DNA of 64,000 nt from Lepidodermella squamata (GCA_047495785.1 JBLDXI010000013.1:3596001-3660000), one strand, 5' to 3'. Positions 15,506 through 60,288 are shown, counted from the first letter of the stretch. A program made the numbers and translations. Notes: a model not told the origin generated them from the sequence alone.

Positions 15506-16189
15506 TCGCAAACGGAGGAGAGATTGCAGAGAACAAAAGGCTTATCCCTAGCCTTCCCTTATATATAGTGTCTTCACTTATTATTCAATAGATAAAATAT
15601 TATTATGGGCCTTGAGTGTAGGCTGGAATGTTGGATACTCATGAGAGAAGTACTGAATCTCCCCGGACCCAGATGCTCTTCTGATTCATCAAAGAATTCA
15701 TGAAAATAATAGTTGAATTCTCCTGGTTCACTCACCCTTATGATCGGTGAAATGAACACGCTAATACTTACCGGGTAATGATGATTTTTTCTGATTTACC
15801 TGGCTGAAAGCTGATGGATTTTGCAGCATTTTTCGATTTTGTCTGACGCTTATTTCAAGTATTTTTAATATATTACGAGTCTTGACATCATAATGGCAGG
15901 AAAAATGTCTGATATATTGTAACGTGTCGCCGGTCGCCGAAGGGAAATCAATGGAACCTTTGAAAAATGTCTCCGTTTACAAGCCTTTCCACCTAGAACC
16001 TAGATCCAGCCGTTCCGGCACCAAATTTACTCTTATAATTGAGGTATATTTCAGAGCAACAACAAAAACCTTCCATTTACCCCAGTTTAGGCCTATTGTG
16101 CTCACAATAAGTGGTGTGAAATGTTGAAGGCAGCCTAATACATTGATTAGGTTGAGCCAGCACAACAAAAACAAGCAGTAGATTGAACA

Positions 16190-18643
16190 ATGCTGTACAC
16201 GTCAATTAAGGCTTTACCATTTCTCATTGTCGTCATAGGTAAATTCGCCCTCGCCGAATTATTGAACTTCTCCGATCGGCTTAACGTCACGGTTTTAGAA
16301 GAGGATGATTTGATCGAAAGGCCATCAATCGAGCAGTTGATGAACTTATCGTCGAATCAGAATCTAACTCTATTTGATGAAGAAGAGCTACCTGATGGCC
16401 GTCGTTTACTCACATTCACTCTTCAAATCAGCGGCTACCAGTTGATGGGCTACGATTTTACTTTTACGGAAGACGAGACTGAAGCTATCAAGTACGCATT
16501 GAGCGGCCAAATACTAGACGATATTCCTAAGTTTGATAAGCTGGCCATGCAAGTGATTAAACGTAGCGAGAAGATCGGCAATCAAACAGGTTACGCGGCG
16601 TGCATGAAAGGTCTCGCCGAACAATTTGACTTCAAGGAGGTGAGAAGGGAGTCTTTAACTATCTGTTGACCAGCTAATACTGATCGACAAAATTACGTAG
16701 AGAAACGGTGTCGAAATTGGCAACTTTTCCAGCCGATATTTGTGGTTTGATGGTCAGTTCATGACCATGGTGGAAGGCTTCGGCATTTTCAACAACCTGG
16801 ATGAAGCTCAGAGATATTGTTTGATTTACACTCCCTCAGAGAAATGCCTTATTCATTTATTTAGTTTGCTTACACGACATACTCAACAATACAATCATAA
16901 TGTTGGCTCCAACTTCAACCTATGCCGTCGAGGCAGCAGGTGGAAACAGGAGAATTGGCAAGCGTAAATTGACCCTCGATCTAACAGATAGAGTTTCTCA
17001 ACTGGAAGAGTGCATTGTCGAACATCCGAAAGGGTTTTTTACCATCTACGACATGGAGGGTAATACTTCCATATCGGATGAGGCAGAACCGTTGACCTAC
17101 CCATGCGGCAACTTGAACGAAGACGAGGTACTTCAGGCTAAAATGATCGCTCATTTTCTAGTTGGATATAACTAACAGGTGAATGGCGGTTACGGCATCG
17201 CAGCTGACTGCATGGATTACGCTATCCAAACGCAAAAATGTCTGGCAAAGCATGGTGAGGAATTATGACTCTTGACTAAAGCTAAGTGAAATTGAATCTC
17301 CACAGTGAATATGCACGACTTCGGTTTCATCACAAATGGAAAGCCTCTGCGAATTCACATCAATTACGGGCAGATGAAACCTATAGCATTTTGGAACGAG
17401 AACGGCATTTTCTTCGGTGAGACAACCTCCTGTGGTTGATTCAGGTTGATAAGCAATTTCTTCATTATTAGGCAACGGAGATGTATCGAACGAATATCCT
17501 TCTTGCTCGAGCATCGACTCTGTTTCTCATGAAATCGGCCACGCCTTGACAGCTCGCTTTTCAGGGCTCTACTACTCCGGAGAAATGGGCTGTATCAATG
17601 AAGGTGAGTACAAGGAATAACCATATCAGTGAATAGGTGAAGTTGATTCTAATTCAGCCTTCAGCGACATCACTGCAATGATGGTTCGAGCTTGCGTTCG
17701 AGGTACAACAGATTGGCTGTTTGACATCGATGCACAGAAGGCCAGAGACGCTGCGAGCCGTAATCTTGTTCGGAATCTGAAAAAGCCGACCTCAGATGCT
17801 CAGCAGATAAAGAAATACAGCGAGTACAGGCCAAACATTGACGTACACGTCTGCAGCGGGATTTATAACCACGCTTTCTACTTGCTGTCCCAAACTCGAG
17901 GATGGGATATCTACTCGGCTTACCAATTGTTCTATGGCGCCAATAGATTTAAATGGGTAGATTTTACCAAAATGGCCGACGGACTATGTGGAATCCTCAC
18001 CTATGCTAAATCGCTAGATCTGCCATCGAAAAAAATGGCAGATATCAGAGAAGCCTTTGGAAAAGTTGGTTTGTTCATCAATGGAACGAAATGCGACCTG
18101 TCAGATGGTTTCGAGAAGAATCCCGATGGATTTATAACACTTGACAACTGCGTTACCACTGAAGGCATTCAAGGAGAATCAACTGATATCTATCATTTCG
18201 TCCACGAAGTGAAAAAGAAGCCCGGCAAACCCGCCCCGTCCAAACTAATCATATCTTTGAGGCTGCCTAAGAGCCAAATAGAAAATGATGATGTTTTAAA
18301 CTCAGAGGACAATGACGACTCCGATTGTGATGATTGCGATGATAACGATATCGATGCGGATGATAATTTGGATGATGACGAAGACAGTGGCGAGATGAAA
18401 GTAGATTTACTGATTTATTATGGTATGAAGAACATACCAAACGGTGGTGACATCAAGTACGGGGAATTCGACGCAGTTATAGCCAGACAATCTGAATCGA
18501 TACAACTGGTGATAAAGTGCCCTCCGATCGGGAATTACACCTTTGTAATCGTCTCGACCGGGCAAGGTGCCTACAGCGATGTTTCTTTCAATGTATGCCA
18601 CTTGTCCTCAGACTCAGATGTCTGTGAGGTAAAACGTTTATAG
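16190..18643 (+). CDS. M4 (thermolysin/elastase/vibriolysin-like) zinc metalloprotease precursor, 7 exons, C-terminal PPC-like domain
   Basis: Exons ~16190-16639, 16701-16818, 16865-17127, 17179-17254, 17306-17416, 17472-17603, 17658-18643. Motifs GGNRRIGK, VNGGYG, HINYG..IAFW..FFGNG, HEIGH, SGLYYSGEMGCINEAFSD, DVHVCSGIYNHAFYLL; N-terminal signal peptide. Confidence 0.93.
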
Positions 18644-18921
18644 TATGGCCCATTTTACTCTGTGAAATAGCTTCAAAGATGTTTTGAAACAAAATAAAAT
18701 GTTCTGTATTTATTAACTATTAATTGCTACAATTTTGAAGCACAGGATCTCTAATTCCTCACTTCGTAGACATATGACATTTGTGATTAACAGGCAAAGC
18801 TATATTCAGCGGGCGATATCCATTATTTAGGAATAGAAGCCTTATAGAAGCAGCAATAGATGAATTCAATATATAGGAGCACATTTATGCGAAATCAGGT
18901 CATTCTCGAGAACAATGCAAA

Positions 18922-19513
18922 TCAGCAATAGTAATAGGTTCTTTTTATTTCTTGATCCATATCTTGAACGACCTGATATTGATATCGTGGACACTTGCAC
19001 TTGACACACAGGCAGTACCCGGCGTAATACAAAACTCGGAAGAATTGTGATAAGGCGATTAATATGGCTAGAATATTGACAGCAAATAGGGCTGCAGCGC
19101 GAATTTCAAAAGACTCAACTATTGCGTCCAGCAATAATAGGAATGAAATAAGGGTTGCGAGAGTTGTCAAAGCTGTCATAAACCTACCTAACAGGAAAAC
19201 GCAGGCATTCAAAATTTATAAATGACCGGCTAGAGTTTAACTTACTGAAGCAGAAACAACAGCTGTTCTCTTCTTCGTCGTCGCTATCTTCATCATCATA
19301 GTTTTGGCCATAATTGCTCAAGAAAAAGTCCACAAAAGCCACGGCAATGATTATCGCAAAACCAGCTGTGAATTTACTGCGATCGCCATGATATCTGATA
19401 CCCGTGATCTCATTACCATAGAGCAAAAGCAAAGCGATTAGTGAGAGAAGAACCGGGAAGCTGTTAGTGAAAGACCAGCACCAATTTTTGCGGCTGCACT
19501 CCTTATTGCACAT
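18922..19513 (-). CDS. Four-TM family member (2 exons)
   Basis: RYHGDRSKFTAGF...FVDFF; gtaagt...gttag phase-1 intron; TM4 'SQFFRV'. Confidence 0.75.
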
Positions 19514-20298
19514 TGTCTGGTCAGCTTGAAATCCCTCCAAGTGCCAACTTGTTTGTTGCAGGCTAGTCCAATCAATTCTCTATACAAGGTCCGCCTGCTT
19601 TGCTCTTTAGTCTACTTTTTATTGTCTACCGTGCTGTTGCTAAAACTCATCCGAAGGAACACATGAAAGTTGCAAGGCTAAGTCATAACTGGGCTCAAAC
19701 CTATTGGCCTCTCCTGTTACATATGGCTCATAGTGAATAAAGAATGAGGCAAAATTGCCTCACGCTCAGCAGTTGAATGAAACGAAAGCCGTCTCAGGAG
19801 AACCAGTATGAATCCGAAATGTTCTGATAGGTCGAAGTGTGCAATATTCAAGGGATCATCGTGGCCAAAAAAATGGAAATTCAGCCCGCTGCTTCGACAA
19901 TTTTGAGAGGCTTTTGAAGCATTTTTAGTTGGAAATCTTCAACATTTCCTCGCTACGCTCGATTTTCGGTTGAAATCCCTTGACATCTGGCAAATATAGC
20001 ATCCAAAGATCCAGGATCCAAGGTCGCATCCTGGGTCGAAATGTGTGAAGCCTGTTTGGTTGGCTCAGAAAGTTGTTCAACAATCATCAGGATTTACTCG
20101 CGTTATAATCTTGAAATATTTATAAGAGCTTTTATTTTTATTCAGTATTCAATATTATCTGTGAATTGAAAAGGTTTCATTCTTTGGCTTCACCAAGCAG
20201 ACTACGTAACGAGATTAAACGATTGGAGATGTTACAAGATTGAATAAATTACAATTATTTATATCAAGCAAGAATCATATCATATCTTTAGATTCATA

Positions 20299-21015
20299 TC
20301 AAGCTTCTTCATTTTCTTCACATTTATCCATTAAGCCTTTACGCATTTCACTGTCTGCTTCAGCAATGGTTTCATATTGATACGAAGGGCACTTTTCCTT
20401 TATACAAGCATAGATAAGGTAAACAATTAATCGAATGATGTATAGTATAATGATAAACACAGCGAGAACATTTACAGCTTTGTAATCGCCGCCGGGATCT
20501 TTCTGATTAGCCTCTGCAAGAGCACAAATCAGCAGTACGAATGAACCGATGGATGACAGGGTCGTAATAGCTGTTAAGACCTTACCTGTTAGACGAATGA
20601 AGTGATACAGCTTTTTGTTTCATATATATGACAGTTAAATCATAAACATACCAACTTTTTCCAAAGCGAAGGTATTTTCATGACTGATAAACATCACGAT
20701 TAAGTCCAGAAGGGTCACAGTGAGGATAATAGCGAATCCGGCTCTGAACTTGATAGGATCACCTCGGTAGGAACCGTCAACGTGATTCAACAGTATCAAA
20801 CAGATGGCCGAAGCAACAAACGGGGTTATGTTAGTTAGGCAGCAGAGACAGCACATCCTTATCAAGTTGAACCACATTACGCAACAATCCACGATGATCT
20901 TACCGTATGCAGCGTCCGCTCGGGCCTTCGCGAAACCCGACAACGCTGGGGTACATGGCCGATTGCCATCCTGGAAGAAGTTTGCAGGAGGCGGTAAAGT
21001 GCTACATTGGTGCAT
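20299..21015 (-). CDS. Four-TM family member (2 exons; exon 2 is absent from the ORF track)
   Basis: SYRGDPIKFRAGF...LLDLI | GKVLTAITTLSSIGSFVLLIC...VNVLAVFIIILYIIRL...EEA*. Confidence 0.75.
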
Positions 21016-21158
21016 TTTCCTTAGTGATCTCAATATCGCAAAAACCTAGTTTCCTTTCCCAGTGGAATCTTTTTATTAACAATTTTATTTACCACCATGC
21101 TGTGTTATAGGAATATGATTTTCAAACTCATGCGAAAGGAACACTTAATTTTTCAGTC

Positions 21159-21765
21159 TCAAACCGATTCGTAAGGCTGGCGTTTGCAGCAACAGCAGGC
21201 GATGAGAATAATCGGCAGACGGATGCCATAAAGTACCAAAATCACAATGGCCATAATGTTAACACATCCGTAATCGTCGTAGCAGTGCTTGCCTGGGTTG
21301 GTCGCGTGTGGGTAGCTTCGATCCGCATCTGCAACGCAGTAAACCAGCCAGGCAAAGGTTAGGACAGACGCCACAGCTACAGCAAGGCTAACAATCTTGC
21401 CAACTTAGAATAAACAGAGCTTAAAATGTAAGGAAAAAATAGTTGAAATGAAGATTTTTCTTACTCAAATCCGAGGTGCATCGGCATATGCAAGAATCGC
21501 TTGAAGCCATACTCTGCCCACAGCAACAGCAGAGACCGGCCATACCGACTTCGAATAGGGCGATTATGGTAACGAAGCAAAATCCGGCGAAAAATGACGA
21601 CTGACTGCCGCGAACGTATACCGGGACGTCGGTACCTTTATGCTCATGCAGGGTCATCACCGCTGCGACGATTGCGAAAATCAGCGGGATAAAGCTGGTG
21701 AACAGGAAAAGCCGACATCCGACTTCATCGGTTGAATAAACTGCACGCCGCTCAAGTTGAGGCAT
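21159..21765 (-). CDS. Four-TM family member (2 exons)
   Basis: VRGSQSSFFAGF...LFEVG...CCCC | ...CYDDYGCVNIMAIVILVLYGIRL...CCCC. Confidence 0.8.
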
Positions 21766-22248
21766 TTTTTTGAAAAAATTACTTGCAGAAAGAAAGAAAA
21801 TCAGTGAAATAAGGCATGCAATAAAGCATCAGCCTATAATCTTGACATCATCTGTTCTGGTTGTAAAAATTAAGGCATTGTTACGCCATAAAAAAAGATT
21901 ACTCATCAGTCTGAATAAGAGATGAAATAATAGAGCACCGCGCCCTAAATTCAGCCGCTTTTGGGATTTTCCTTCTTTGCCAGCCAGGTGCACTTTTGAA
22001 AAATAATTGGCAAAAACAGGAATACATAGAGGAGTTCATGGGCTATCAAATGCCGGTTTCCGCAAGTCAGGACGATTTTACCTTGATTTATGGCTAATTT
22101 AGTAGTAACCCGGACTTCTGGCAGAAATTGAATAGACAATGCAAATTGATTGAGTTTCGTGCAAAACACTGCTACACACCGCTTTTTGTGTCCAAATTTC
22201 GGCTGGCGGGCGAAATTAAGGTTTTCAGCTCTGCCGTAGGTGAGGGTA

Positions 22249-22430
22249 ATTTAGGACAAAACCATGAGGATTAATTAAAATCAGTCCTAATTCAGAACAC
22301 ACTGATTTTTCTGGTAAAGGTGAGCCTCGATTTATCGGCAAAATTTGGTGATTTTACGATATTTACCAGAATTTTGGCGATCGAAAACAGTTAATATGGC
22401 TAAAGTTGGACAATTAGCGGGCAATTCTGG
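22249..22430. repeat. Degenerate interspersed repeat shared with ~41535-41690
   Basis: Collinear words taattt(a/t)ggacaaaa, cgattta, gattttacga and ttggacaattagcgg at both loci. Confidence 0.5.
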
Positions 22431-23187
22431 ACGCGCTCATTTGCATATGCATTGGTATTGTGAACTTTTCAGATTTTTCTATGAGCTATGGGTCAATTTT
22501 GGAAAAAATTATGAACTAATGGCACTTTCATTTTCAAAAAAATGAGAAAAATAATGTTTCGTTCAGCCGCATCTTTACACTGCAGTACAAAAATGCCCGA
22601 TTTTCACCTGAACTGGAATCTTCGTTGGATCTTTTCGTTTATATTTCGATAACTAAGAGAACGCCCCTAGGATACCCCAGCCAATTTTCGTCCCAATGAT
22701 TATTTGTTTGCGAGGAGATAGGAATGGGTCCCAAATTGAGATTTGAGTTACCTTGCTCACAAAATGTCTTAAAAATAAATTATTGTTCCAATCACCTTGG
22801 GACATGCGCCATTCGAAAGCTCAAGAGACGGGACATTTTATGCAACAAACCCTGTGTTTTTATCGTACGGCGTTACAAAGCTGTTATAACTTGCAAAGCC
22901 GAAGTGTCCATAATTATGCTGCGCTATGGTAATTCAACATGATTTTATTCGCACAGAAAATATCGTCGGTTTTTGTTCATCCGCCATTCATTTTTGTTGT
23001 GTGTTTCACTCATAAAACATCAGCATGGATGAAGCTTCAAACTAAATTTTCGAATATAAACAGGTACAAATTTGATACATTTCATTTTCGATCGGCACAT
23101 TATATGAGTTCAATTTTCGAATAGCACTTATAGCGCGATGAGTAAAAAAAGCTTCAACAAGCTCGTATATATATATATTAAGGCATC

Positions 23188-26100
23188 TCAAGTCGGCGGC
23201 AGAACGTTGAACATGTAAAAAGGGATCATGATTGAGGACGTTAGCGCCACCAGGAAGACGAAATTATCAATGCAAACCGCCGCTGTCCGCAATCTTCTCG
23301 ACCGCCGCTGCGCCGCTCGCTCCTCGTCACTGCTCATATCTTCATCCGTTTGATAAGCCCGCGCTGGTGGTTGCCGTTTGTACAATGGGTCGTAGCTGCG
23401 CCGGTTCGACGGCGGGATATTTCCGATGTCAAGCTGCCGCCGTTGTTGCGGCGTCGCTTTTTGACGGTGCTTCGAGGTGGGTGGGGGTGCTGAGGCTAGG
23501 TTGGGTAGGGTGCCGTAGTTGGCTCCGGCGTTCGTCAGCATAGTCAACGTGTGGTTGCTAGGCGACGATTTGTCGCCGGAGGAAGATGAAACCACGACTA
23601 GATCGACGTTTGTTGTAGTTGTGAGCTCGGCCGATGAGAACAGGCCGTGCCGCGAGACGGCGTCGAGGCTGTCCTCCTCGAATGTGTCGTCACCGTTGAG
23701 CATAGTTACCGGGGCGCCGGTCGTGCCGGACACGAAGCGATCGTTTAGCAGGCTGGTTGTTCCACCGCCAGGATGCGGCGGCGGCTGCATTTCCAGGTCG
23801 CCGTGCCGCCGGTTGTTGGCGGCGCGGAGACGGCTGCGTTTGCTCGCCGCCGTCATCTTTCGCTCGCGACTGCTACCGCGCCGGCGCAGGAAGCTGAAGC
23901 ACTTGAATAACTTCGGCAGACAACCGTTGCGAATTGTATGGTTCAGCATGTATACGCCTATAAATAAAAAATTTCATTTTAATGCTGTGAGCTGTTCGGA
24001 TATACATCTAGGAATTGCCGTAGCTACTGTTTTACTGCTTAAATTAAGGTTCCAACAATTTAATTATATAAGATTCGATTTCGACTAATATCTTTCTTTT
24101 TCGGCAATGATGCACCCTATAACCCAGGAATTTTCCGAATTGGCTACCTGACACCATCAGTTGTGAATAAAATATCTTGATGTTGGCTTTAAAGACTGCT
24201 GATATCTGAAAAATCTATGATAGATAATACTGAAAGAGTGAGTATTTGCGCCTTTTCTGGGAGGGCAGTTTATTCCAAGTTACCACTTTATCATAAAACA
24301 AGTGATTTTGGTATGCCCATATTTTCTGACGGAAATTGGATGTTCCCGTCTCAATAACGGGCCGGGCGACAGAATAGAATGCGACATAATAGCGAGTACA
24401 CCCGAAATAGCGAGGCACGGCTCAATAAAGCGTGCGCTCGACCCGAAAAAGCTCGCTCCGAAGCTTATAAGTCGAGTGCAAACCCGGACAATTTTAGGTT
24501 TCGATTGACCATACAGAAAAAATCACCGAAAATAATGTTGAGGAAGAAAATTCAAAATCTTCATTTTGGAATGCCGTCGGTCTATTGATATTTCTCGCTG
24601 GCAATTTTTTTTTAAATATAATACTCGTAATGCCACGACCTTTATTCTAACAAATCAGTGATATTTCCAGGTAGAAAATTCCGAATAAATACGATGATTT
24701 GGCTCTGACAAGAAAATATTTCTGATGAAATGTAATGAATTTCAGCCTAAATCGCGCCTGTAATTCAAAATTTTATAGACTGGCAGAGATCGGGCGGGAA
24801 TTAATTTTCCACTACAAATAAATAATTTAAAAAAAATGTTTTTGACAATGAAATAAGTAAATTTCGCAATTATTCAGTTTGCTATGATAGCAATTTTTAG
24901 GAAAACCGGATAAAACGGGCTTTATAATACTCCTAAAACCATATAATTCCGTTAAAAGCGGCTCAACTGTTTGCCAAAAGGATTACCAAATGCGATGAGG
25001 CTTTGATTAGCGATTGAGGCTAGATAAAAATAATAATAATTTACCTAAAATAGCGTCTGCTACAGTAACGACGCTGATACCGGTAAGAAAGTCGATATAC
25101 AGGCAGAGCAGTGGTATTGAGTTTGAGGTTCGCGGCAGTTCACCGACGACGATCGACTGAAACACAATTACTGAAAGCAGAATCGTAGTCGATTGTGATA
25201 TTCGGTCTTCGCTGCCGATCGGCAGGAAAAACGTCAGTATTTGAAGAGCAGATAACATGCCACATGGAAAGAAGACATTAATCTAAATTAAAAAAAAATT
25301 AAAAAATATTCCTATAAATTCTTAGGTCCCCAGAACCTTGTAGTAGAGTGTTTTCCTCCGAATTTCCAAGGTTATTTCAACCCTGGAAAATGCCGTAGAT
25401 GAAGTGACGTAATTGAGCTTAGGAACGGCGTAAGCAGTCATTAGGTCCCATTGACCTAATTAATCGAAAAAAACGGTCCTAATTTTGAGGAAAAATTTAA
25501 ACAAAAATTACCGCTCTCGGTGAAAGTTTTCAAAGAAACTGCCGATTTGTCGTACCGAACAGTTAAATTCAAAAATTCTTTCGGGTACATAGCACTCTCG
25601 AAAACTATTTTTCAAAAATTAATAAATATCGATTTGAAAATTTGAAAAAATACCGATTGGGCATCGTTGAGTATCAAAGGGGAAATATGACCTAAAATCC
25701 ATAATTAACATTTTTTATTAATTTTTTTTTCAATTTTTCTTACAAGTCTAGCTCGCATCGGGTGAATATGGTACCAGTCGGGAACCACCAGATGCAGCCG
25801 TCTGAGTGAAGTTTGAAGTCGAACCTACGGTCGCGAATCAACGCGTAAACATCGTCCAGGGCGTTGATGATTTGAATGTCTGGAATCCAGAGCCGGTCGC
25901 CGGGTATGATGACGTAGTCGACGCCGCCGAAGCTGTCCGGCTCCCACGACAGCGCGCCGTCGCACCAGTTGAGCTGTATTCGCATTGTCACTTCCAAAGC
26001 TTCAGTTTTCACATCTGTCCTTTCCCACTGAGAGCGATTACGGGTTAAAAATTATTAAAATTAAATTAAAATGCAATAAATTACGGTGACATAATTTCAC

Positions 26101-26727
26101 GGTCACAAAATAGCTAAAGGTAGATTACATTACTTCATGCTAGAAAAAAGCCCCAAAGCAATTTAAGATCCTGAAATTTGTAAAAAAAATCCCATGCGAT
26201 ATTCTAAATTAGATCCAACAGGGTGTCTACAACGTCCAAGAAGGTTACATCAAGTTACAGAGGCCAGTCTAATTTTTTTTAAGCATTCCGAGACATTTTT
26301 TTTAGGTTACTACTTCCACTACATTTAAATGCTTATTTTTAGTATACCAAATTTTGAATTTTAATGAGCGATATTCGGGTCCGAACTTCGAGCGTCCCGT
26401 TGTCGGTTGTGAGCGGGCGGGCGTAATACGTATAACCGGCGGCAAGTAGCCGCCTTAAGATTTGCAACTCGTAACGCCGATCGACTGTGGCTGATGAAGA
26501 ACGAGAAACCGTATTAACTGTACAAATGTTTTTTGATAGAAAAAAAGCAACAGGCATGCACCCAAAAGCCCCTCACCCGGGTTGACCTTACCTGTTCCGT
26601 GGTGCTGTTTATCGGCGCCCATCGCCAGCCCGGTCAGCCATAATAGCAATAAAAGGGTGGCTGAAATCAGCCCTAAATCCGGCGGCCTGAAGCCGAATAA
26701 AGTCCCGCCGTGAATTAGCAACCGCAT
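23188..26727 (-). CDS. Cys-loop ligand-gated ion channel subunit, nicotinic/5-HT3-like cation type, non-alpha; ~8 exons
   Basis: Signal peptide; ARPL; W.D..L.W; LWIPDI; Cys-loop C-ELDL|SYFPFDTQR-C; GQW; RRKTLYY; M1-M3 'FFLPIGSEDRISQSTTILLS...ELPRTSNSIPLL'; long M3-M4 loop; M4 'AAVCIDNFVF'. Confidence 0.92.
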
Positions 26728-29690
26728 AATTTCGGTCGCGCTGCTGTAACGATAGCCGCTTCTACACACCAATGTAACAGCAACGGCCGGCTCGGTGGTA
26801 GTAGTAGCCGGCAAATCGGCTCATCGATACGCGTGTTAATTTGAGGAAAAAATCACTTTAATAGTAATAATAATAATAATAGCGCCATATCTAATATGAA
26901 TATGAAAAAATGCGCCTTAATAAAAAGATTTAGCGCGCGCGCACTCCGGCTCGCTCCCCCGCCGTCTCACTCCTTCCGATACATTTATATATCAGATCCA
27001 CTTTGATGAATATCGCAAGTAATATATCGTTGTACAGATGTTTTCAACACGATTAACAATACCCGTGTAGAAAATTGGTGCGCTTAATGAATAAATCATT
27101 GGGAAAACAAAAACAACGCCTGAATGCGAAAAATTTGTAGATACAAACAGCATTTAGAAAGACAAAGTCAATGTTTTTCGATGGCAAGGTCTTAAGAGCC
27201 GATCGGCGGCTCACAATTGACAGGATATATTTATCGCTGACCGGCAGTACTTTGCCTTTCTTCGAAACTGATGCATTAATACGAAAACGCAATATAATTC
27301 GGTAGTAGTAGGGTGGCCAGTTAGTGTTGATGTTTCGCGCTAATAATGATAATAATAATAATAATAAGACTGGCAACAAAATGTCTCTGATATATAGCAC
27401 AGAACCGATAAAAAGGAGACTAGGAAATAAGGAAGTCAAGCCGTTTACATATTATAATAGATTGTGCATTAAAGCGAGGGGCCAGTTTTTTCTGCTATCA
27501 TTCGATGATGGGGCGAAAATACATAATATTCCATTAGTTGACAAATATTTGTACGCATGAAGTCTTGCGCGCGGCGAGACATTAATATACGGCTGTTATA
27601 TTATTATGTTAAAATACTTGGAAATGCCAAGATATTGGAAAGACTGACAAAATTTTTCCGTCAACAAATTATACTCACTCTGTGTCATCTTATTAAAGCG
27701 CCACAGTAGGCACATATACGCGCATTCCTATGTTATTAGGAATTAATAAAACAGCCCCTAATATACACAAATCCAATCAGAGCCCTTACCTTCTTATACA
27801 GGTGCAAACAAGTTCGAAGAAAATTACATCAAACTTTTAGCTAAATAAGAAAAATCACTGCAAGTATGTTTGAAGGCGGAAAAAATTCCAATATGCTATT
27901 ATTTGAGGTAGTGTCTGCCAGCAAGTCTACCTGAGTGCTGGTAATGGCTGAAAAAATAAACAATGCGAGGCATGTATCATCACCTAAGCCGTTTTGCTAT
28001 GCGATATATTAGTTTACAACATGATATATTGTGTAATCAAGGAAAAAATGATCCAGACACATGTGTGTAGTATAACAACGTCTAATGAGCCGTTACATCC
28101 ACAGACAAAACAAATTCTATAACATGATCATCAAAATATTTTACTTGTTTGCGATGAAATCTTGAACTAATTCTTCATTATTTATAGGGTTACAGGGACT
28201 ATTTTAGAAGAAACCCAACTTTTATAGGATGGATTTAAGATTTTTCCGTGTTATTTTAGTATATATTGAATGTATCGGAAAAATCGAAAATAAACGCGCG
28301 CCGATTGTTTGCTATTATTACTCACTCACTCCACGGACGGGCGGTGGTGAGAAATGCAATAATAAACTGGTCGTAACAGACTAGAACAATAGAATTTGCC
28401 TTGCGCTGGTAATAGAATCAATTAACAAATGAATTATTATTACGGCGATCCGTAACATCGGCGAAAAAAATTTGTTTTTTATTTTATTAGTGATTTTGCA
28501 ATGAGATGCTTAATGATAACAGTAAACAGGCGAAGGTGCGGTAAAAATATACGCGAAATTATGTTAACGCAATGAACGCCGCAGGTACTTGAGCCGTAAA
28601 CAACCGGTACAGGCTCGCGCTAAATTGAGCCTAACAATATGTAGATGCAGCGAAGCGAATCGGTAGCGCTTTGGCCATTCACAAGAATGGCGATGTTGAA
28701 AAAATAACCTGAATTGCCACCGGGTTTTTGTTGCGCCGTCTCGTCGTCGATTTTCTCGCGAAGGTGGGGCGAAAAAAATCGATGTATTATTGCATGCGCC
28801 AGCGATGTGAGCGTAATTTGGTTTGTTTATTCGCGCGTGACGCGTGTATCACCACCATTGCTGGGCGGCATTATTAACTTACGCGCATAGACTTTGCCGC
28901 TATTAAGGTGGGTGCGCACGAGCGCGAATTGTTTAAGCGCAAATATTGTGAGCAATTTTTATTATAGTCAGGTTTATTTTCATATACGTTTCTCTACACG
29001 TGATGCGACTAGGAAGCCAAACACCAGCAGCCGGCCGCGCGCACGCGCATTGTCACTTGGTCAAATCTTAATTGGCCAAACTTGAGCGACAAAAAATATA
29101 TCTGGCTCTGTTTATATAACCTTCTGATAGCGCTTTTTCCGCATAGACAATATTGCGAAATAGCCATGGTGACAGTAGCACTTTTATGGTACACGAACAC
29201 AGCGAAAAATTATTTTTTTCGCCAACGACCACCAAAATAAAAGATAATAAAAACTGAGGTTAATTATTTCCATTCCAAATATACCGGTCAGCAATCGGAA
29301 ATCAATCACTCAATACTGCTATGTTTTTCTGTCACGAAAATAATCTAATCAAAGGTTCGCTAGAATTCGAAAGCTCTGTTGAAGTTTCGACAAAAACTCA
29401 TCACATTCGAAGCCGAGATTTTACCGGAAACTTCATCGAATAGTAATCAATTACGTCTCTTGTGAATGGGAGGAAAAAGTCGAAGAAATTTGATCCAACC
29501 AGGTAAAAACCGAAAATTACCGAACCAGTGACCATCAGGGTTTTCACAAGTAAATTTTCAATTTCTTCGGTAACATCGTGGATAAAGATTGGAAGATTCT
29601 GAACTTGATTTCTAAAAAAAGTTAAAATTCCTAAAAAAATCTCAAAATTTACAAATGGCTGCGGAACTTATGGGACATTATTTTGTTCTA

Positions 29691-29852
29691 CAGGGTGGCC
29701 AAAAAAGCCGGAAAAGGGAACTTGATGCGCATTATTATAAATGAGTTTTAGGAAATAGATGAATTGCTAGCATTCTTTTGCTAATGAAACTCTTCAATTT
29801 CTAGAAAATCCTCATCAAATTCGCCTCCTGCGGCTTTTTTTTGGCCACCCTG
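29691..29852. mobile_element. 162-bp MITE, Tc1/mariner type
   Basis: Terminal inverted repeats CAGGGTGGCCAAAAAAGCCG / CGGCTTTTTTTTGGCCACCCTG, flanked by TA on both sides (29689-29690, 29853-29854). Confidence 0.85.
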
Positions 29853-29984
29853 TATCTTTGCAAAAATTCGAAAGAACAAAAAAACAATAAGTTTCGAGCG
29901 CCCTCTAAACAGTGCTATTTATTTAATTTTTCCAACTCAATGTTAAAATAGAAAATCGTAGCTGAAATTGCATGACGACAAATA

Positions 29985-32447
29985 TTATAATTTATTGACC
30001 TCGCAGACATTTGAGTCTGGGGTCAAGTGGCAGGCATTCAGTGAAACACGGTTAAAAGCACCTTTCCTCGAAGATCCGATAATTATGCTGTAAATGCCAA
30101 TCGGAGGGCACTCAATTACCAGTTGTATCGATTCAGATTGACGTAGTAGAACTGCGTCAAATTCTGCGTACTTGAGGGAGTCACCGTCTGAAATGTTCTT
30201 CATTCCGTAATGAATGAGTAAATCTACTTCCATGAGGCCACTGTCCTCCTCCTCGTCATCATCCTCTTCTTCCTCGTTTTCATCTGCATCTTCCTCGTCA
30301 CAATCATCATCACAATCAGTGTCGTCATCTTCGTCATTCACCACAATTTCGCCATTATCAATTTTGGTCGCAGGTAACCTCAGGGAAAGGATTAATTTAG
30401 ACGGAGCAGGTTTTCCGGGCTTTTGCTTAACTTCGTAGATGAATTGGTAGATATCATTCGAATTTCCTTGAAGGTTTTCTTGGGTATAGCAGTTGGGTAG
30501 TGGGATCAATCCATCAGGATTCTCGTCATAACCATCCGACAGGTCGCATGTCGTGCCATTAATGGTAACTCCGACTTTTCCGAAGGCTACCGTGATATCT
30601 TCCACTTTTTTAGATGGCATTGATAGCCTGTTGGCGTAGGTGAGGATTCCGCAGAGGCCGTCAGCCATTTTAAAGAACTCCCCCCACTGAAACCTATTAG
30701 CGCCATAAAATAATTGATAGGCCTTGTAGATATCCCATCCTCGAGTTTGGGACAGCAAGAAGAAAGCGTGGTTGTAAATCCCGCTGCAGACGTGTACGTC
30801 CATGTTCGGCCTGTACTCGCTGTATTTCTTTATCTGCTGAGCGTCTGACGTCGGCTTTTTGAGATTCCGAACAAGATTACGGCTCGCAGCGTTTTGAACC
30901 TTCTGCGCGTCGATGTCGAACAGCCAATCTGTTGATCCTCGAACGCAAGCTCGAACCATCATTGCAGTGATGTCGCTGAAAGCTGCATTTGATCATCAAA
31001 TTTAATAGCGATTAATTCCTTTTACCAACCTTCATTGATGCAGCCAATTTCGCCGGAGTAGTAGAGCCCTGAAAAGCGAGCTGTCAAAGCGTGCCCGATT
31101 TCGTGTGAAACAGAGTCGATGCTCGAGCAGGAAGGATATTCGTTCGATACATCTCCGTTGCCTTGTTGAAAAATGTCTTTCAACTCTGCAGAACCGCAGT
31201 GTTCTGGTACTCACCGAAAAATACGCCGTTCTCGTTCCAGAATGCCGTAGCTTTCATCCGACCGTAATTTATGTGAACTCGCAGAGGTTTACCATTCGTG
31301 ATGAAACCAAAGTCATACAACTGAACTGTAGAGAGAATTGTAGAGCGAAATGCTACGACGAGGGTTGATCTTACCATGTTTCGCCAAACATTTTTGCGTT
31401 TGAATAGCGTAATCCATACAGTCAGCTGCGATACCATAACCGCCATTCACCTTATGGTAATTTCCAATTAAAAAATGAGCTACTGGTATCGCTGAAGTAC
31501 CTCGTCTTCTATCAAAGTACCACACGGGTACGCCAGAGCTTCAGCCTCATTCGATATCGATGTATTTCCTTTCATGTCGTAGATGGCGAAAAATCCTTTC
31601 GATTGTTCGACGACGCATTCATCCAGCTGAGTAACTCTATCTGTAAGATCGAGACTCACTTTACGCTTGCCGATTCTCCTATTGCCACCCGTAGCCTCGA
31701 CGGCATAAGTCGAGGTTGGGCTTAACAGGACGATAGTATCGTTGAGTATGTCGTACATGCATACTAAATCAATTTAGGATAACATTGTGCGAATAGGGAA
31801 TATCGGAAGTTTAACAATATCTCTGAGCTTCATCTAGATTGTTGATAATGTTGAACCCATCATACATGGTCATGGTATGGCTATTAAAATCGTAGAACAA
31901 AAATCGCGCTGAACGGGTATTGATTTCGACCCCATCTCCCTAAGTAATTTCACTGATTAACAGGTAGCCATGAGAACCTGTATGTAACCTCCTTGAAGTT
32001 GAATTGTTCATCAAGACTTTTCATACACGCCGCATAACCTGTTTGATTGGCGATCTTCTCGCCGGGTCCAATCACTTGTCTGGCCATCTTATCGAACCGA
32101 GGAATATCGTCCAGTATTTGACCGCTCAATGCGTACTGGATGGCTTCAGTTTCGTCCTCGGTAAAAGTGAAATCGTAGCCGGTTAACTGATAGCCGCTGA
32201 TGTGGAGAAGGAATGTGAGAAGGCGGCGACCATCTGGTAGCTCCTCTTCGTCGAATAAAGTCAGATTCTGATTCGGTGATAAGCTCAGCAGCTGCTCGAT
32301 TGATGGCCTTTCAGCCAGGTCATCCTTTTGCAAAACTGTGACATTGAACCGATTGGATTGATTGTACAAGCGGGGCTCCTTGGCAAGGGCGAAGTTGCCA
32401 ATAAGAACAATAAGAATTATGCAAGCTTTAAATGACGTGAACAGCAT
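29985..32447 (-). CDS. Second M4 metalloprotease paralogue (inverted), 7 exons, same intron positions
   Basis: GNGDVSNEYPSCSSIDSVSHEIGHALTARFSGLYYSGEIGCINE|AFSD and DVHVCSGIYNHAF are intact; aligns with 16190-18643 over its full length. Confidence 0.93.
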
Positions 32448-33461
32448 TGTTCAATTCACTGCTAAAATTCTAGAATCTGGCTAGCCCTATTTCATGTTAG
32501 TCTGTTTCAACATTTCATGCCATTGTTATGATAACAATAGGCCTTTACTACTAGAGTGATAAAATGTGTTTGTTTTGATTTTAATTACACCTCAATCGTG
32601 AGATTGAACTGGCTGACGCGAGGGCATAAGCTGTGGGGGAAGGCAAATTAGTTGAGGCGTTTTTTCATGCCTCTACTGGTTTTCCGACCTCTGGCACAAC
32701 TAAACCTAGTTTTCCTAGTGTAGCCTTCCTTCCTCTATAAATAAAAAGATTGGGTTGTTACATAGGTACTTCATCTGGTTGATATTTAGGAATTACAACA
32801 AATCTCCACCGAAAATCAACAATGAATTTTCGCTGAAACCGCATTCAGGCCTCTATAATGAAGGGGAATACTGATGAGCAATGCCTCAGAAACTGCCTGC
32901 ATGCTGCATGAGACGAGAAAAAGACGTCTGCCGTTGAAATGCCGTTTCAGCAACTTCATTGCGATCATTGTACATACACAGCACTGATCATAGTGATCGT
33001 AATTTGCATTTACGTTCAATGGTCGAACAATCCAAGAAAAATCTATAAATGTTGAAGTGGTTTTTTTTGGCGCGTCGCTTGGTTGTTTTGGAACGATATG
33101 GAAAGTAGATTTCTTGAAGTTCGGGGCTGGTTCGTGAACATCCATTCAAATGACCTTTAAACAGCCTCTTTATTCAATTCTGCTAGCCGTCCATGATTTC
33201 CATGCCTATATGCAAAGCTCCGATACATAACAACAATAATCTCTGACGACTCATTTATAATCAGTGATCATGCATTATTAAGAAAGGAGGGCTGCATGTT
33301 AAATCAATCTGGCCTATTTCGGTCGCTAAATTGCACAGATTTAGCGGAATCGTTAAATAAACTATCGTCAAGTTCCTTAGTAGATAATCGATCTGCAGCT
33401 TGGAAACCGAGCACTTTTGCAAAACTCAGTCAGAAATCATTGCAGAAACATTCTGTTAACG

Positions 33462-58477: not shown

Positions 58478-60288
58478 TCAACGCGACTGGATTATAATCT
58501 CATATGCTGGCGACAGGTTAATTAGGCCGGACAAATATTCATTGAGATTCACCGGCTTCGACAATCTGAACGAAAATTTGCGCAAGATAGACGTCAAGAA
58601 CAGGAAATACTCGACTCGCGCCAGTGATTCGCCCAAGCAGATGCGGGGTCCAATGCCAAACGGCATGAAGTGCGACGAATGGCTCAGCAGCTTACCGTTG
58701 CTTTCATCTATCCAACGGTCAGGCTGAAACACGTCCGGATCTTGCCAGTATTTAGCGTCATGGTGGACACCCGCGACATTGTAAATAATTAGAGTATTCT
58801 GAGGAACATCGTAACCCGCGATTTTGGCTTGGCAATCCAGGTTCGAATGAAACAGCGCAACAGGGGCGATTGTAACTTTACGAAGTATCTCATTCATGAT
58901 GGCATCCAAGTAGACCAATTTAGGCCGATCAGCCAGGCTAGGCTGTCGATCTGTGTCGTAAAACGAGTCGATACAATCGTGACATTTCTTCTGGATTTCC
59001 GGGTATGTCGCCAGGTGAAGAAGGGTCCAGCTGAGCGCCGTTGCTGTTGTTTCAGTACCAGCCATAAACATGTCGACCATGACGAAGGTGAAGTCGCGAA
59101 TAGACATTTTCTCACCGTTGGGGTCTCGTTCCATTTGGATGAACAAATCTGGGAAGTCGCGGATGTTTTCCTCGTTGTAGTCTTTACGGTGATCTTCTAT
59201 CGCTTCGATCAACATCTTTTCAACGTAGTCAGCAATTTCCAAATGAGCTGTGGTCTGTGGGTTCCAGTTATTTAATGGAACTAAACTTGAAGGTCTAGAA
59301 TGACTTACTTCGCGAGGTTGAGTGAAGTTATCGAGGATGGGAAACGCAAGATATTTGGTTCTCCCGCCAGTCATGTTTCGCGCAAGCTCGGCAATGTTGT
59401 GTAACAGCTTCTGAAATGTTGGATCTCCATACTCAAATCTGCAATAAAAAAGCATTTAATGAGCTATTTAATTAAAAGAGAAAAACGCAGTACAAAAACG
59501 GTGCGAGTCCAAAGCTATTAGGATCTAAAATTTCGCTCATTTCAAATATTTCTATTGATTTTCGGTGAATTTCTTTAGATACGGCTAGAAACTATAGGCT
59601 TAAAAACGGAGCCAAATAAAAAATTGCCCACAGATTTCATCCTTGATTTAGATTTCGCATACCTTTTTCCGAAAACGAATTCGCTGACAACATTTGAAAC
59701 GGCATTGGCGATTAGTTCTCGAGGGTCAAATGGCTTGCTGACGTGCTTCGACATTTCATCAAGGAGCTGTTCGATTTCGAACAAAATTTTCGTCACCATA
59801 GCATCCTTTCCCATTCCTATTTTTAGGAAATATTTTTATAACAGCGATATTGGTCTTTTGAGTCATTTAATACCGAAGTCTCGCATAGCTTTCAGGCCGA
59901 AACGCCGATGCCTTCGCCACTGGTCATTGCTAGTCATTAGAACGCCGTTGTTGACGGCCCCCATTGTTGGCAGAAAATCAGAGCCTCTGGAGCTGAAAAC
60001 CTTAGACTGATTAACGAGAACTTCGCGAATCAGCTCGGCATCGTTGAGGACGAGGGCGCGGAACTGGCCCAAGTACATCGTAGCGATAGGGCCGTATTGA
60101 TCGCCGAGATCACAGAAAAATTGCCACACTTTCCTCGCCTTCACATCAGCCGGGTTTGGGAAATATACGGCGGTACCGAGAAAGGGCACTGGTGTTGGAC
60201 CCGGTGGCAGTTTGTATCGTTTGTCAAGGAGATAACGATAGGAACCATAGAGAAAAACTGCGGCGGGAATTGCTGCCAGATGCCACAT
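58478..60288 (-). CDS. Cytochrome P450, CYP2 clan (3-4 exons)
   Basis: Membrane anchor + LPPGP; WRRHRRF; AGTETT; EILR; PDRW; heme motif FGIGPRICLGESLA. Confidence 0.96.

What the first reader, a model, noticed from the sequence alone, without database searches (positions are those of the whole stretch)
16190..32447. Intron-containing, bacterial-type vibriolysin/elastase (M4) proteases: candidate domesticated horizontal transfer, duplicated in inverted orientation
Seen: two genes (16190-18643 +, 29985-32447 -), each with 6 short GT-AG introns at the same positions, intact HEIGH and NEAFSD zinc ligands and DVH..SG.YN.AF. In the zinc-site exon the ~8 differences are nearly all synonymous, while the introns have diverged. 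Established: these motifs and the signal-propeptide-M4-PPC layout match gammaproteobacterial secreted proteases (Pseudomonas elastase LasB, Vibrio vibriolysin), and M4 is mainly a bacterial family. Inference: an old bacterium-to-animal transfer that gained introns, duplicated, and is under purifying selection. Introns and animal neighbours argue against contamination.
Basis: partly seen in the sequence, partly recalled or inferred. Interest (0 to 1): 0.8.

Follow-up and report, generated by a model that had tools for sequence, protein, structure and literature searches.

The report
Bacterial-type M4 protease genes in an animal
Two neighbouring, spliced and selected genes in this animal encode secreted zinc proteases of a type otherwise typical of bacteria (Pseudomonas elastase, Vibrio vibriolysin). 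They look like an old gene transfer, but one probably shared with a few other invertebrates, such as abalone, and not private to this animal.

Summary
Gene A (16190-18643, +) and gene B (32447-29985, -) each have seven exons and six GT-AG introns of 46-61 nt at identical positions and phases. They encode 711 and 720 aa proteins that are 76% identical, with dN/dS about 0.2. All pseudolysin-type catalytic residues and both disulfide pairs are kept. Transcript-derived contigs show intron 2 of gene A removed exactly, and paralogue junctions at introns 3 and 6. Animal genes flank the pair and one lies between them, and base composition matches the neighbours, so this is not contamination.

The proteins belong to the pseudolysin/vibriolysin branch of peptidase family M4, and the best named prokaryotic matches are all Pseudomonadota at 32-38% identity. 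No donor can be named, because the pair sits on a stem of about 2.5 substitutions per site. In careful trees it groups (98/89, 99/86) with M4 genes on eukaryote-like contigs. A wider set that includes three Haliotis asinina RefSeq proteins has 98/90 support. Two signature residues agree, but an AU test does not exclude other placements. The six introns are specific to this lineage.

FTP homology is weak and a PPC domain is unproven. First-reader notes flag M4 genes on five other pieces of this genome.

The parts
16190..18643 (+). Gene A: 7 exons (16190-16639, 16701-16818, 16865-17127, 17179-17254, 17306-17416, 17472-17603, 17658-18643), 711 aa. Layout: signal peptide, FTP-like propeptide, M4 catalytic domain, C-terminal beta-rich domain.
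   Evidence: Splicing model. It matches positions 6-295 of the 301-residue mature LasB domain at 139 bits. Peptidase_M4_C E 2.9e-19.
29985..32447 (-). Gene B: 7 exons (32447-31989, 31939-31816, 31763-31501, 31450-31375, 31325-31215, 31161-31030, 30982-29985), 720 aa. Paralogue of gene A, 76% aa identity.
   Evidence: Peptidase_M4_C E 1.6e-18. LasB mature domain 145 bits.
16819..16864 (+). Intron 2 of gene A (46 nt, GT..AG, phase 1), the only intron with a direct spliced contig for this exact copy. The other introns of A are 16640-16700, 17128-17178, 17255-17305, 17417-17471 and 17604-17657.
   Evidence: A contig of run X3 covers 16700-16818 and 16865-16959 and skips exactly 46 nt, GT..AG (tables 5 and 8). 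Loose ends in run X2 show exon 6/7 and exon 3/4 junctions of close paralogues at the same positions (table 7).
17472..17603 (+). Exon 6 of gene A: zinc-site exon with HEIGH (His, catalytic Glu, His), the Tyr of GLYYSG, and the start of NEAFSD (third zinc ligand Glu).
   Evidence: There are 8 nt differences from gene B, of which 1 changes an amino acid.
17660..18070 (+). Alpha-helical half of the M4 catalytic domain (Peptidase_M4_C), with DVH (catalytic His, Asp) and CSGIYNHAFYLL.
   Evidence: Pfam. Best solved structures are pseudolysin 7nlk/1ezm, E 2e-20.
18071..18640 (+). C-terminal domain of about 190 aa, predicted all-beta, interrupted by an acidic Asp/Glu/Cys-rich insert (about 18266-18394). 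Possibly a degenerate PPC domain.
   Evidence: No Pfam match. A local PPC HMM is not significant. hhalign spans the whole PPC profile with P 0.001-0.004. Atlas feature search scores 0.92 to M4_C+PPC clusters. The AlphaFold model has pLDDT 43 and six strands.
16190..16639 (+). Exon 1 of gene A: N-terminal hydrophobic signal-like segment (residues 1-23), then a propeptide with an FTP-like motif (residues about 41-114).
   Evidence: Hydropathy. An HMM built from bacterial M4 propeptides scores 14.8 bits, E 2.6e-6 in a two-sequence search. No Pfam match at E 0.1.
16038..16189 (+). Upstream block duplicated together with the gene (its partner is 32448-32596 on the minus strand). It includes a conserved motif, AGGCCTATTGT...TGAAATGTTGAA. 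Candidate shared promoter.
   Evidence: The blastn alignment extends about 150 nt upstream of both ATGs. Sequences.
18693..18698 (+). AATAAA 50 nt after the stop codon of gene A. Gene B has AATAAA at 29918-29923 on the minus strand.
   Evidence: Coverage by the transcript-like run X2 begins in bin 16194-16290 and ends in bin 18619-18715 (table 2).

Best explanation
These are two functional nuclear genes of an animal. Each encodes a secreted zinc metalloendopeptidase zymogen of the pseudolysin/vibriolysin branch of peptidase family M4.

Inferred mechanism, by homology with LasB and vibriolysin:
- A signal peptide directs secretion.
- The FTP-like propeptide folds the catalytic domain, inhibits it, and is removed autocatalytically.
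- Zinc is held by the two His of HEIGH and the Glu of NEAFSD.
- The Glu of HEIGH, the Tyr of GLYYSG and the His of DVH catalyse cleavage of the peptide bond.
- The C-terminal beta domain, probably a decayed PPC domain with an acidic insert, is an accessory or binding module.

Origin: the family is ultimately bacterial. The window pair most likely belongs to a sparse group of eukaryote-borne M4 genes that also occurs in abalone and in several unidentified invertebrate-like genomes. The transfer would then predate this lineage.

Within this lineage the originally intronless gene gained six short spliceosomal introns. A 2.6-kb segment (gene plus promoter) was then duplicated in inverted orientation (dS about 0.6-0.7). 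Both copies have since been kept by purifying selection, as part of a larger family in this genome.

Shown: gene structure, catalytic residues, selection, integration into the animal genome, partial splicing.
Inferred: secretion, activation, enzymatic activity, depth of the transfer.
For: - Gene models and identical intron positions and phases.
- The M4 catalytic domain is complete against LasB at 139 and 145 bits. Pfam M4_C E 1e-19. The best PDB matches are pseudolysin entries.
- Zinc ligands, catalytic Glu, Tyr, His and Asp, and both LasB cysteine pairs are aligned and conserved.
- dN/dS 0.20 (NG86) to 0.27 (YN00), lowest (0.10) over the active-site half.
- Spliced contigs.
- Animal genes on both sides and in between: Sushi, ANF_receptor and CYP2-type P450, and a pentameric channel exon at 25743-26012.
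- GC3 is 0.51, like the neighbours.
- By their record titles, nearly all of the best 80 GTDB loci are Pseudomonadota (one is titled Deltaproteobacteria).
- The window pair groups with eukaryote-borne M4s at 98/89 and 99/86. The wider 16-row set has 98/90.
- Those relatives are Haliotis asinina XP_067678922/3 and XP_067678047 on a 67-Mb chromosome, and tandem genes on sparse, AT-rich contigs without Shine-Dalgarno sequences.
- Two signature residues are shared by 25 of 25 eukaryote-borne sequences including the pair. They occur in 10 of 268 and 33 of 268 other sequences.
- The relatives have no intron in the body of the gene, so the six introns are lineage-specific.
Against: - The pair's stem is very long (2.2-2.5 substitutions per site), so its place may be a long-branch or composition artefact.
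- The AU test does not reject trees with the pair outside the other eukaryote-borne sequences (delta lnL 32.7, p 0.185).
- Trees are unrooted, and no thermolysin-type outgroup was available.
P0029 and P0089 were not classified.
- Pfam detects neither a propeptide nor a PPC domain.
- No enzymatic or tissue data exist.
- Direct splicing evidence for this exact copy covers only intron 2.
Confidence: 0.62

Rival explanations
1. Private, lineage-specific transfer. An ancestor of this animal alone took the gene from an unsampled vibriolysin-bearing bacterium, which is the first reader's reading in its strict sense. Abalone and the other eukaryotes acquired theirs independently, and the grouping in the trees is long-branch attraction among fast-evolving eukaryotic copies.
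For: - The AU test does not reject the pair lying outside the other eukaryote-borne sequences.
- No relative closer than 42% identity exists among 1.84 billion representatives.
- No intron position is shared with Haliotis.
- The C-terminal domain shows no detectable similarity to those of the other eukaryotic M4s.
- A JGI metagenome scan with pair-specific patterns found nothing.
Against: - The best trees from two different samplings put the pair with eukaryote-borne sequences, at 98/89 and 99/86.
- Two signature residues that are rare in bacteria are shared with all of them.
- No bacterial group attracts the pair once other long branches are removed.
Confidence: 0.27
2. Vertical inheritance. 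M4 proteases of this type were present in early animals or eukaryotes and were lost in most lineages, with no bacterium-to-animal transfer.
For: Eukaryote-borne M4s form one side of a branch with 98/90 support, which a single old origin would also produce.
Against: - The distribution is extremely patchy. Named eukaryotic hits came from one mollusc only.
- The eukaryote-borne group lies among pseudolysin/vibriolysin-type sequences that, where named, are Pseudomonadota.
- The relatives are intronless in the gene body, as expected for genes of prokaryotic origin.
- Some relatives keep the bacterial PPC domain.
Confidence: 0.08
3. Contaminating bacterial DNA, an assembly artefact, or decaying pseudogenes.
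For: None beyond the bacterial look of the protein.
Against: - Twelve GT-AG introns.
- Spliced contigs, and DNA contigs from separate studies.
- Animal genes on both sides and between the copies.
- Host-like GC3.
- Intact reading frames, with dN/dS 0.2.
Confidence: 0.01

Closest known systems
Pseudolysin (LasB elastase) of Pseudomonas aeruginosa, MEROPS family M4 (PDB 1ezm, 7nlk, 8cr3)
   Same: It is the best solved-structure match (E 2e-20 on exon 7). The whole mature domain aligns (139-145 bits). HExxH, NEAFSD, the Tyr, DVH..SSG.YN.AFYLL and both disulfide cysteine pairs are conserved, and the signal-propeptide-catalytic order is the same.
   Different: Catalytic-domain identity is only about 30-34% to any sequence compared. 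The window proteins have three small insertions (DFGFITNGKP, a 2-residue insertion in NGDVSNEY, and RDAAS). They carry an extra C-terminal domain of about 190 aa with an acidic insert. They are encoded by a seven-exon animal gene.
Vibriolysin / Vibrio cholerae haemagglutinin-protease and Aeromonas or Pseudoalteromonas relatives (M4 with a C-terminal PPC domain)
   Same: Same M4 subfamily. Their length and domain order (propeptide, catalytic domain, one C-terminal beta domain) are the closest architectural match. The Atlas feature search points to M4_C+PPC clusters. hhalign aligns the whole PPC profile to the C-terminal domain.
   Different: The PPC domain is not detectable by Pfam or by a local HMM. 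MAFFT and hhalign disagree on the register. Identity is 32-38%.
Haliotis asinina 'hemagglutinin/proteinase-like' and 'neutral protease-like' proteins (XP_067678922.1, XP_067678923.1, XP_067678047.1), and unnamed eukaryote-borne M4 genes (ENA ERZ26052378, ERZ25071447, ERZ25069853; GCA_022702835.1)
   Same: They are animal or eukaryote-resident members of the same M4 subfamily, often in tandem copies. They fall on the same side of a 98/90 branch as the window pair, and they share the two signature residues.
   Different: Identity is only 25-33%. Their coding bodies have no introns (Haliotis has one intron after the first few codons), against six here. Their C-terminal regions are not detectably similar to the window's. 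I found no paper describing them.
Other bacterial enzymes domesticated by animals after horizontal transfer (for example plant cell-wall hydrolases of nematodes and many genes of bdelloid rotifers; recalled from my own knowledge, not tested here)
   Same: The signature is the same: a prokaryote-type secreted enzyme, host-like composition, acquired introns, duplication and purifying selection.
   Different: This is a different enzyme class. Here the transfer seems old and possibly shared among phyla, and the donor is untraceable.

Membership tests
Peptidase family M4 (thermolysin family), pseudolysin/vibriolysin subgroup | HExxH zinc motif, with the third zinc ligand Glu in NExxSD about 20 residues downstream | tested here: met
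   HEIGH and NEAFSD are present in both proteins and align with LasB HEVSH and NEAFSD.
Peptidase family M4 (thermolysin family), pseudolysin/vibriolysin subgroup | Peptidase_M4_C (alpha-helical) domain above Pfam's gathering score | tested here: met
   70 and 67.6 bits against a cut-off of 24.4.
Peptidase family M4 (thermolysin family), pseudolysin/vibriolysin subgroup | N-terminal catalytic half (Peptidase_M4) | tested here: met
   The spliced proteins match positions 6-295 (A) and 6-297 (B) of the 301-residue mature LasB domain by phmmer, and match many M4 proteins by blastp at E 1e-37 to 1e-44. Pfam itself could not be run on the spliced protein, because it has no reference. Single exons are too short to score.
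Peptidase family M4 (thermolysin family), pseudolysin/vibriolysin subgroup | Catalytic His and Asp of the C-terminal half (LasB H223/D221), the transition-state Tyr (Y155), and the subgroup motif DVH.SSG[VI][YF]N.AFYLL | tested here: met
   IDVHVCSGIYNHAFYLL and GLYYSG align with the LasB residues. The first Ser is replaced by Cys.
Peptidase family M4 (thermolysin family), pseudolysin/vibriolysin subgroup | The two disulfide cysteine pairs of pseudolysin | tested here: met
   All four cysteines are aligned and conserved. Actual bonding was not testable.
Peptidase family M4 (thermolysin family), pseudolysin/vibriolysin subgroup | FTP/PepSY propeptide | tested here: inconclusive
   No Pfam match at E 0.1. 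An HMM of bacterial propeptides scores 14-15 bits at residues 41-116, in the expected place. blastp alignments to four M4 precursors start at residues 12-51.
Peptidase family M4 (thermolysin family), pseudolysin/vibriolysin subgroup | Zinc-dependent endopeptidase activity | not testable with these tools
   Requires expression and an enzyme assay.
PPC (bacterial pre-peptidase C-terminal) domain | Significant match to PF04151, or a PPC fold | tested here: inconclusive
   Pfam finds none even at E 10. The local HMM scores 0 bits. hhalign gives P 0.001-0.004 at 20% probability or less. The AlphaFold model has pLDDT 43, too poor for a fold search. The Atlas feature score of 0.92 is a lead only.
Gene acquired by an animal from bacteria (horizontal transfer) | Physically integrated among host genes, not a contaminant | tested here: met
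   Sushi, pentameric channel, ANF_receptor and CYP2 P450 genes are on the same contig, and one lies between the copies. The genes have introns and AATAAA signals.
Gene acquired by an animal from bacteria (horizontal transfer) | Transcribed and spliced | tested here: met
   Intron 2 of gene A is removed exactly in a contig of run X3. Paralogue junctions at introns 3 and 6 appear in run X2. Introns 1, 4 and 5, and all of gene B, were not directly seen.
Gene acquired by an animal from bacteria (horizontal transfer) | Nested with support inside a bacterial clade (an identifiable donor) | tested here: not met
   The pair has no supported bacterial neighbour. It groups with other eukaryote-borne sequences. 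The nearest bacterial branch, a ProA-like group, is weakly placed. The trees are unrooted.
Gene acquired by an animal from bacteria (horizontal transfer) | Patchy distribution: absent from most animals, family otherwise prokaryotic | tested here: inconclusive
   Of 671 hits among 1.84 billion representatives, none reaches E 1e-30. Named hits are bacteria, plus Haliotis asinina. The library carries no taxonomy, so I could not make a systematic count of animal carriers.

The most novel reading that the evidence does not exclude
One ancient transfer of a vibriolysin-like protease gene, possibly from a ProA/vibriolysin-type proteobacterium, founded an animal M4 protease family. That family survives in several invertebrate lineages: abalone, this animal, and at least three further unidentified hosts. 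It has repeatedly expanded in tandem. In this lineage alone it acquired six spliceosomal introns, which would make it a dated, clean series of intron gains in a gene known to have started without introns.
Probability: 0.4. Interest if true: 0.62.

Novelty: new member of a known kind. Interest (0 to 1): 0.5.

Why it matters
M4 proteases are textbook bacterial secreted enzymes and virulence factors. An expressed, selected, multi-copy M4 family in animals would add a protease class to the animal repertoire, for digestion, defence or matrix remodelling. I found no paper describing one.

Because the gene's ancestors had no introns, the six introns here must all be gains. That gives a rare, clean case for studying how and where short introns arise.

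The link to abalone and other invertebrate genomes turns a single-species curiosity into a question about an old, patchily retained acquisition. That question can be tested directly with taxon-labelled genomes.

Tried and rejected
- **Word-index protein search with exon 7**. It returned one hit only, because of the length window.
- **Pfam on single exons**. Only exon 7 scores. The spliced protein could not be given to Pfam, structure prediction or the big searches, because it has no reference and I did not type long sequences. I used local phmmer, blastp and HMMs instead.
- **PPC tests**. All were weak. I did not fold the C-terminal domain with bacterial PPC rows added, because MAFFT's register disagreed with hhalign's and the result would have been circular.
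- **JGI metagenome scan with pair-specific patterns**. It found nothing.
- **Profile search with eukaryote-borne M4s**. Bacterial vibriolysins swamped it, and it found no further named eukaryote. The one exception was an Idotea baltica record flagged UNVERIFIED_CONTAM.
- **Donor identification by trees**. It failed because of the long stem. In the first tree the pair joined a long Francisellaceae branch, which I treated as long-branch attraction and removed.
- **AU test**. Inconclusive, p 0.185.
- **Paper searches** for animal M4 genes or transfer, and for the accession numbers of the unnamed assemblies. No relevant report; one apparent hit was Peptidase_M41.
- **Naming the animal.** Run names are coded. 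The neighbouring P450 only shows a CYP2-clan animal gene, with its best named hit in a limpet at 36% identity.

Full report
**1. The observation**

ORF lists and the sequence show two sets of open frames with M4 motifs. I spliced them at GT..AG sites that keep one frame.

Gene A (+) has exons 16190-16639, 16701-16818, 16865-17127, 17179-17254, 17306-17416, 17472-17603 and 17658-18643, giving 711 aa. Gene B (-) has exons 32447-31989, 31939-31816, 31763-31501, 31450-31375, 31325-31215, 31161-31030 and 30982-29985, giving 720 aa.

All twelve introns are GT..AG and 46-61 nt long. They interrupt homologous codons in the same phases, 0,1,0,1,1,1.

The proteins are 76% identical and the coding DNA is 80% identical. 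dN/dS is 0.144/0.724 (NG86) and 0.154/0.582 (YN00). dN is lowest over the active-site half. Exon 6, which holds the zinc site, has 8 nucleotide differences and one amino-acid difference. The introns align at only 54-73%.

The duplicated DNA is 16038-18646 versus 32596-29982 at 76% identity. That is the gene plus about 150 nt upstream, and no more. The two genes are convergent, 11.3 kb apart, and tblastn finds no third copy in the window. Each gene has AATAAA 50-65 nt after its stop codon.

**2. What the proteins are**

Exon 7 matches Pfam Peptidase_M4_C at E 2.9e-19 for A and 1.6e-18 for B. Its best solved relatives are Pseudomonas pseudolysin entries at E 2e-20, followed by Legionella ProA and Pseudoalteromonas Mcp02.

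The N-terminal catalytic half is split over exons 3-6, so single exons do not score. The spliced proteins do match positions 6-295 (A) and 6-297 (B) of the 301-residue mature LasB domain, at 139 and 145 bits. They also match many M4 precursors at E 1e-37 to 1e-44.

Alignment with LasB, V. cholerae HA/protease and others shows these features conserved:
- HEIGH, with two zinc ligands and the catalytic Glu.
- NEAFSD, with the third zinc ligand.
- The Tyr of GLYYSG.
- IDVH, with the catalytic His and the Asp.
- The subgroup motif CSGIYNHAFYLL.
- All four cysteines of the two pseudolysin disulfides.

The N-terminus is hydrophobic, like a signal peptide. An HMM built from bacterial propeptides finds the FTP-like region at residues 41-116. 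The score is only 14-15 bits, and Pfam finds nothing there.

The last 190 residues give no Pfam match, even at E 10, and no local match to any C-terminal region of 439 collected relatives. A PPC reading rests on weak evidence:
- hhalign spans the whole PPC profile with the acidic stretch as an insertion, P 0.001-0.004.
- A language-model search scores 0.92 to M4_C+PPC clusters.
- A low-confidence all-beta model has pLDDT 43.
- A local HMM is not significant, and MAFFT chooses another register.

I therefore call the domain 'possibly a decayed PPC'.

**3. Animal gene, not contaminant**

The same contig carries Sushi repeats (7999-8589), an 804-aa ANF_receptor protein (44386-46797) and a P450 (58481-60288). 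The P450 is of the animal CYP2 clan. A pentameric-channel exon (25743-26012) lies between the two M4 genes. GC and GC3 of the M4 genes (0.45 and 0.51) are like those of the neighbours.

Reads were laid on 16000-18900:
- Run X1 is genomic. It covers the introns and the flanks.
- A contig of run X3 (same coded organism, different study) covers 16700-16818 and 16865-16959 and skips exactly the 46 nt of intron 2.
- Run X2 covers only bins 16194-18715, the predicted transcript. Its loose ends read exon 6 joined to exon 7, and exon 3 joined to exon 4, in close paralogues at the same junctions.
- Many X1 contigs at 88-95% identity, with different intron sequence, show further paralogues in the genome.

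This fits first-reader notes of M4 genes on five other pieces of the genome. I could not check those loci.

**4. Relatives**

The exhaustive search of 1.84 billion representatives with exon 7 found 671 proteins at E 0.001 or better. None reached E 1e-30. The best scored 94 bits, at 32-42% identity, and essentially only over M4_C.

The scan of one genome per prokaryotic species used a pattern typical of the pseudolysin/vibriolysin subgroup. By their record titles, the best 80 loci were nearly all Pseudomonadota, including Pseudoalteromonas, Pseudomonas, Vibrio, Aeromonas, Microbulbifer, Lysobacteraceae and Burkholderiales, with one locus titled Deltaproteobacteria, at 32-38% identity. The top hit of the big search sits in a bacterial ruvCAB/aspS neighbourhood.

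All 196 catalytic domains collected are of the SSG[VI][FY]N type. No thermolysin-type outgroup was therefore available, and the trees are unrooted.

**5. Trees**

With all 196 domains, the pair sits on a very long stem. It joins another long branch, a Francisellaceae MAG, and the tool flagged this join as unsafe.

After I removed long rows and thinned to 84 rows, the careful tree placed the pair with P0091, P0046, P0071, P0110 and P0144 at 98/89. The Haliotis group came next.

A second sampling of 67 rows added the bacterial proteins closest to those eukaryote-borne sequences. It gave the same seven-row group at 99/86. It also gave a 16-row group at 98/90, which holds all twelve eukaryote-borne rows plus P0029, P0298, P0042 and P0089.

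Where these rows come from:
- P0092, P0240 and P0147 are Haliotis asinina RefSeq proteins, two of them a tandem pair, on a 67-Mb chromosome.
- P0091, P0110 and P0071 lie on 0.4-7.6 Mb contigs of ENA ERZ26052378, with sparse ORFs and tandem M4 genes.
- P0014 is from ERZ25071447.
- P0298 and P0042 are from ERZ25069853, again tandem, and both keep a Pfam PPC match.
- P0144 is from contig number 91692 of GCA_022702835.1.

The six of these loci I checked (those of P0091, P0110, P0014, P0092 and P0144) have AT-rich flanks and no Shine-Dalgarno sequence. Their M4 coding bodies are uninterrupted. Haliotis has a single intron after the first few codons.

Two residues set the group apart:
- Asp three residues before the N of NGAYSP occurs in 25 of 25 eukaryote-borne sequences, including the window pair, against 10 of 268 others.
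- A non-His residue at the H of NDAH occurs in 25 of 25, against 33 of 268 others.

The AU test does not reject the best tree in which the ten other eukaryote-borne rows form a clade without the pair (delta lnL 32.7, p 0.185).

The nearest bacterial branch is a ProA-like group. Its member P0107 lies on a dense bacterial contig, and its best PDB match is Legionella ProA. The placement is weak, so this is a lead only.

**6. Reading**

The genes most likely encode active, secreted M4 zymogens. Their ancestry is bacterial in type. The most likely history is an old acquisition shared with other invertebrates. After that came six intron gains in this lineage, all before the A/B duplication because both copies share them. 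An inverted 2.6-kb duplication followed at dS about 0.6-0.7, with purifying selection since. A private transfer with artefactual grouping remains a serious rival.

**7. Novelty**

Horizontal acquisition of bacterial secreted enzymes by animals is a known kind of event. Animal M4 genes are already visible in RefSeq annotation. My paper searches found no description of them. I rate the finding a new member of a known kind, of moderate interest. The two most useful angles are the possible cross-phylum animal M4 clade and the clean set of intron gains.

Noticed in passing
window 16038-16189 and 32448-32596: The duplication carries about 150 nt of upstream sequence with a well-conserved block (AGGCCTATTGT..TCA.AA.AA..GG..TGAAATGTTGAA). 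This is a candidate shared promoter or enhancer of the two protease genes.
   Followed up: partly
window 25743-26012 (-): An exon encoding a neurotransmitter-gated ion-channel ligand-binding domain (Pfam E 6.7e-16) lies between the two M4 genes. Other ORFs in the 11-kb interval (20635-21033, 23188-23949 and others) have no Pfam match.
   Followed up: partly
window 44386-46800 (+): An uninterrupted 804-aa ORF with an ANF_receptor ligand-binding region. This is unusually long and intron-free for a genome whose M4 genes have six introns.
   Followed up: no
window 58478-60288 (-); loci L082-L084: The neighbouring CYP2-clan P450 has its closest relatives (41-53% identity) on metagenome contigs (ENA ERZ23486764, ERZ23486787, ERZ27333047). 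Those contigs also carry split P450, spectrin and GH31 genes, so DNA of a relative of this animal seems to be present in those metagenomes. The best named hit is a limpet at only 36%.
   Followed up: partly
window about 18266-18394 (gene A) and about 30230-30365 (gene B): An Asp/Glu-rich stretch with conserved cysteines (DCDD.CD) is inserted in the C-terminal beta domain. It is variable in length between the copies, and its function is unknown.
   Followed up: no
window 17177 and 17656 (loose ends of run X2): Transcript-like contigs of at least one further paralogue (reading ..TCGNITEHE|VNGG..) are spliced at the same positions as introns 3 and 6. More family members are therefore expressed.
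   Followed up: partly
L085 630-2849 and 10001-12226; L092 8001-10196 and 14890-17253; L087 10001-12298 and 17280-19659: Tandem pairs of M4 genes without introns in the coding body, on eukaryote-like contigs of three different assemblies, including the abalone chromosome. Tandem expansion seems to recur wherever eukaryotes carry this family.
   Followed up: partly
L094 6001-7629: A ProA-like M4 gene on a dense bacterial contig with ankyrin-repeat and patatin genes. It shares both 'eukaryote-type' signature residues and sits next to the eukaryote-borne group in the tree. It is a possible hint at the kind of donor.
   Followed up: partly
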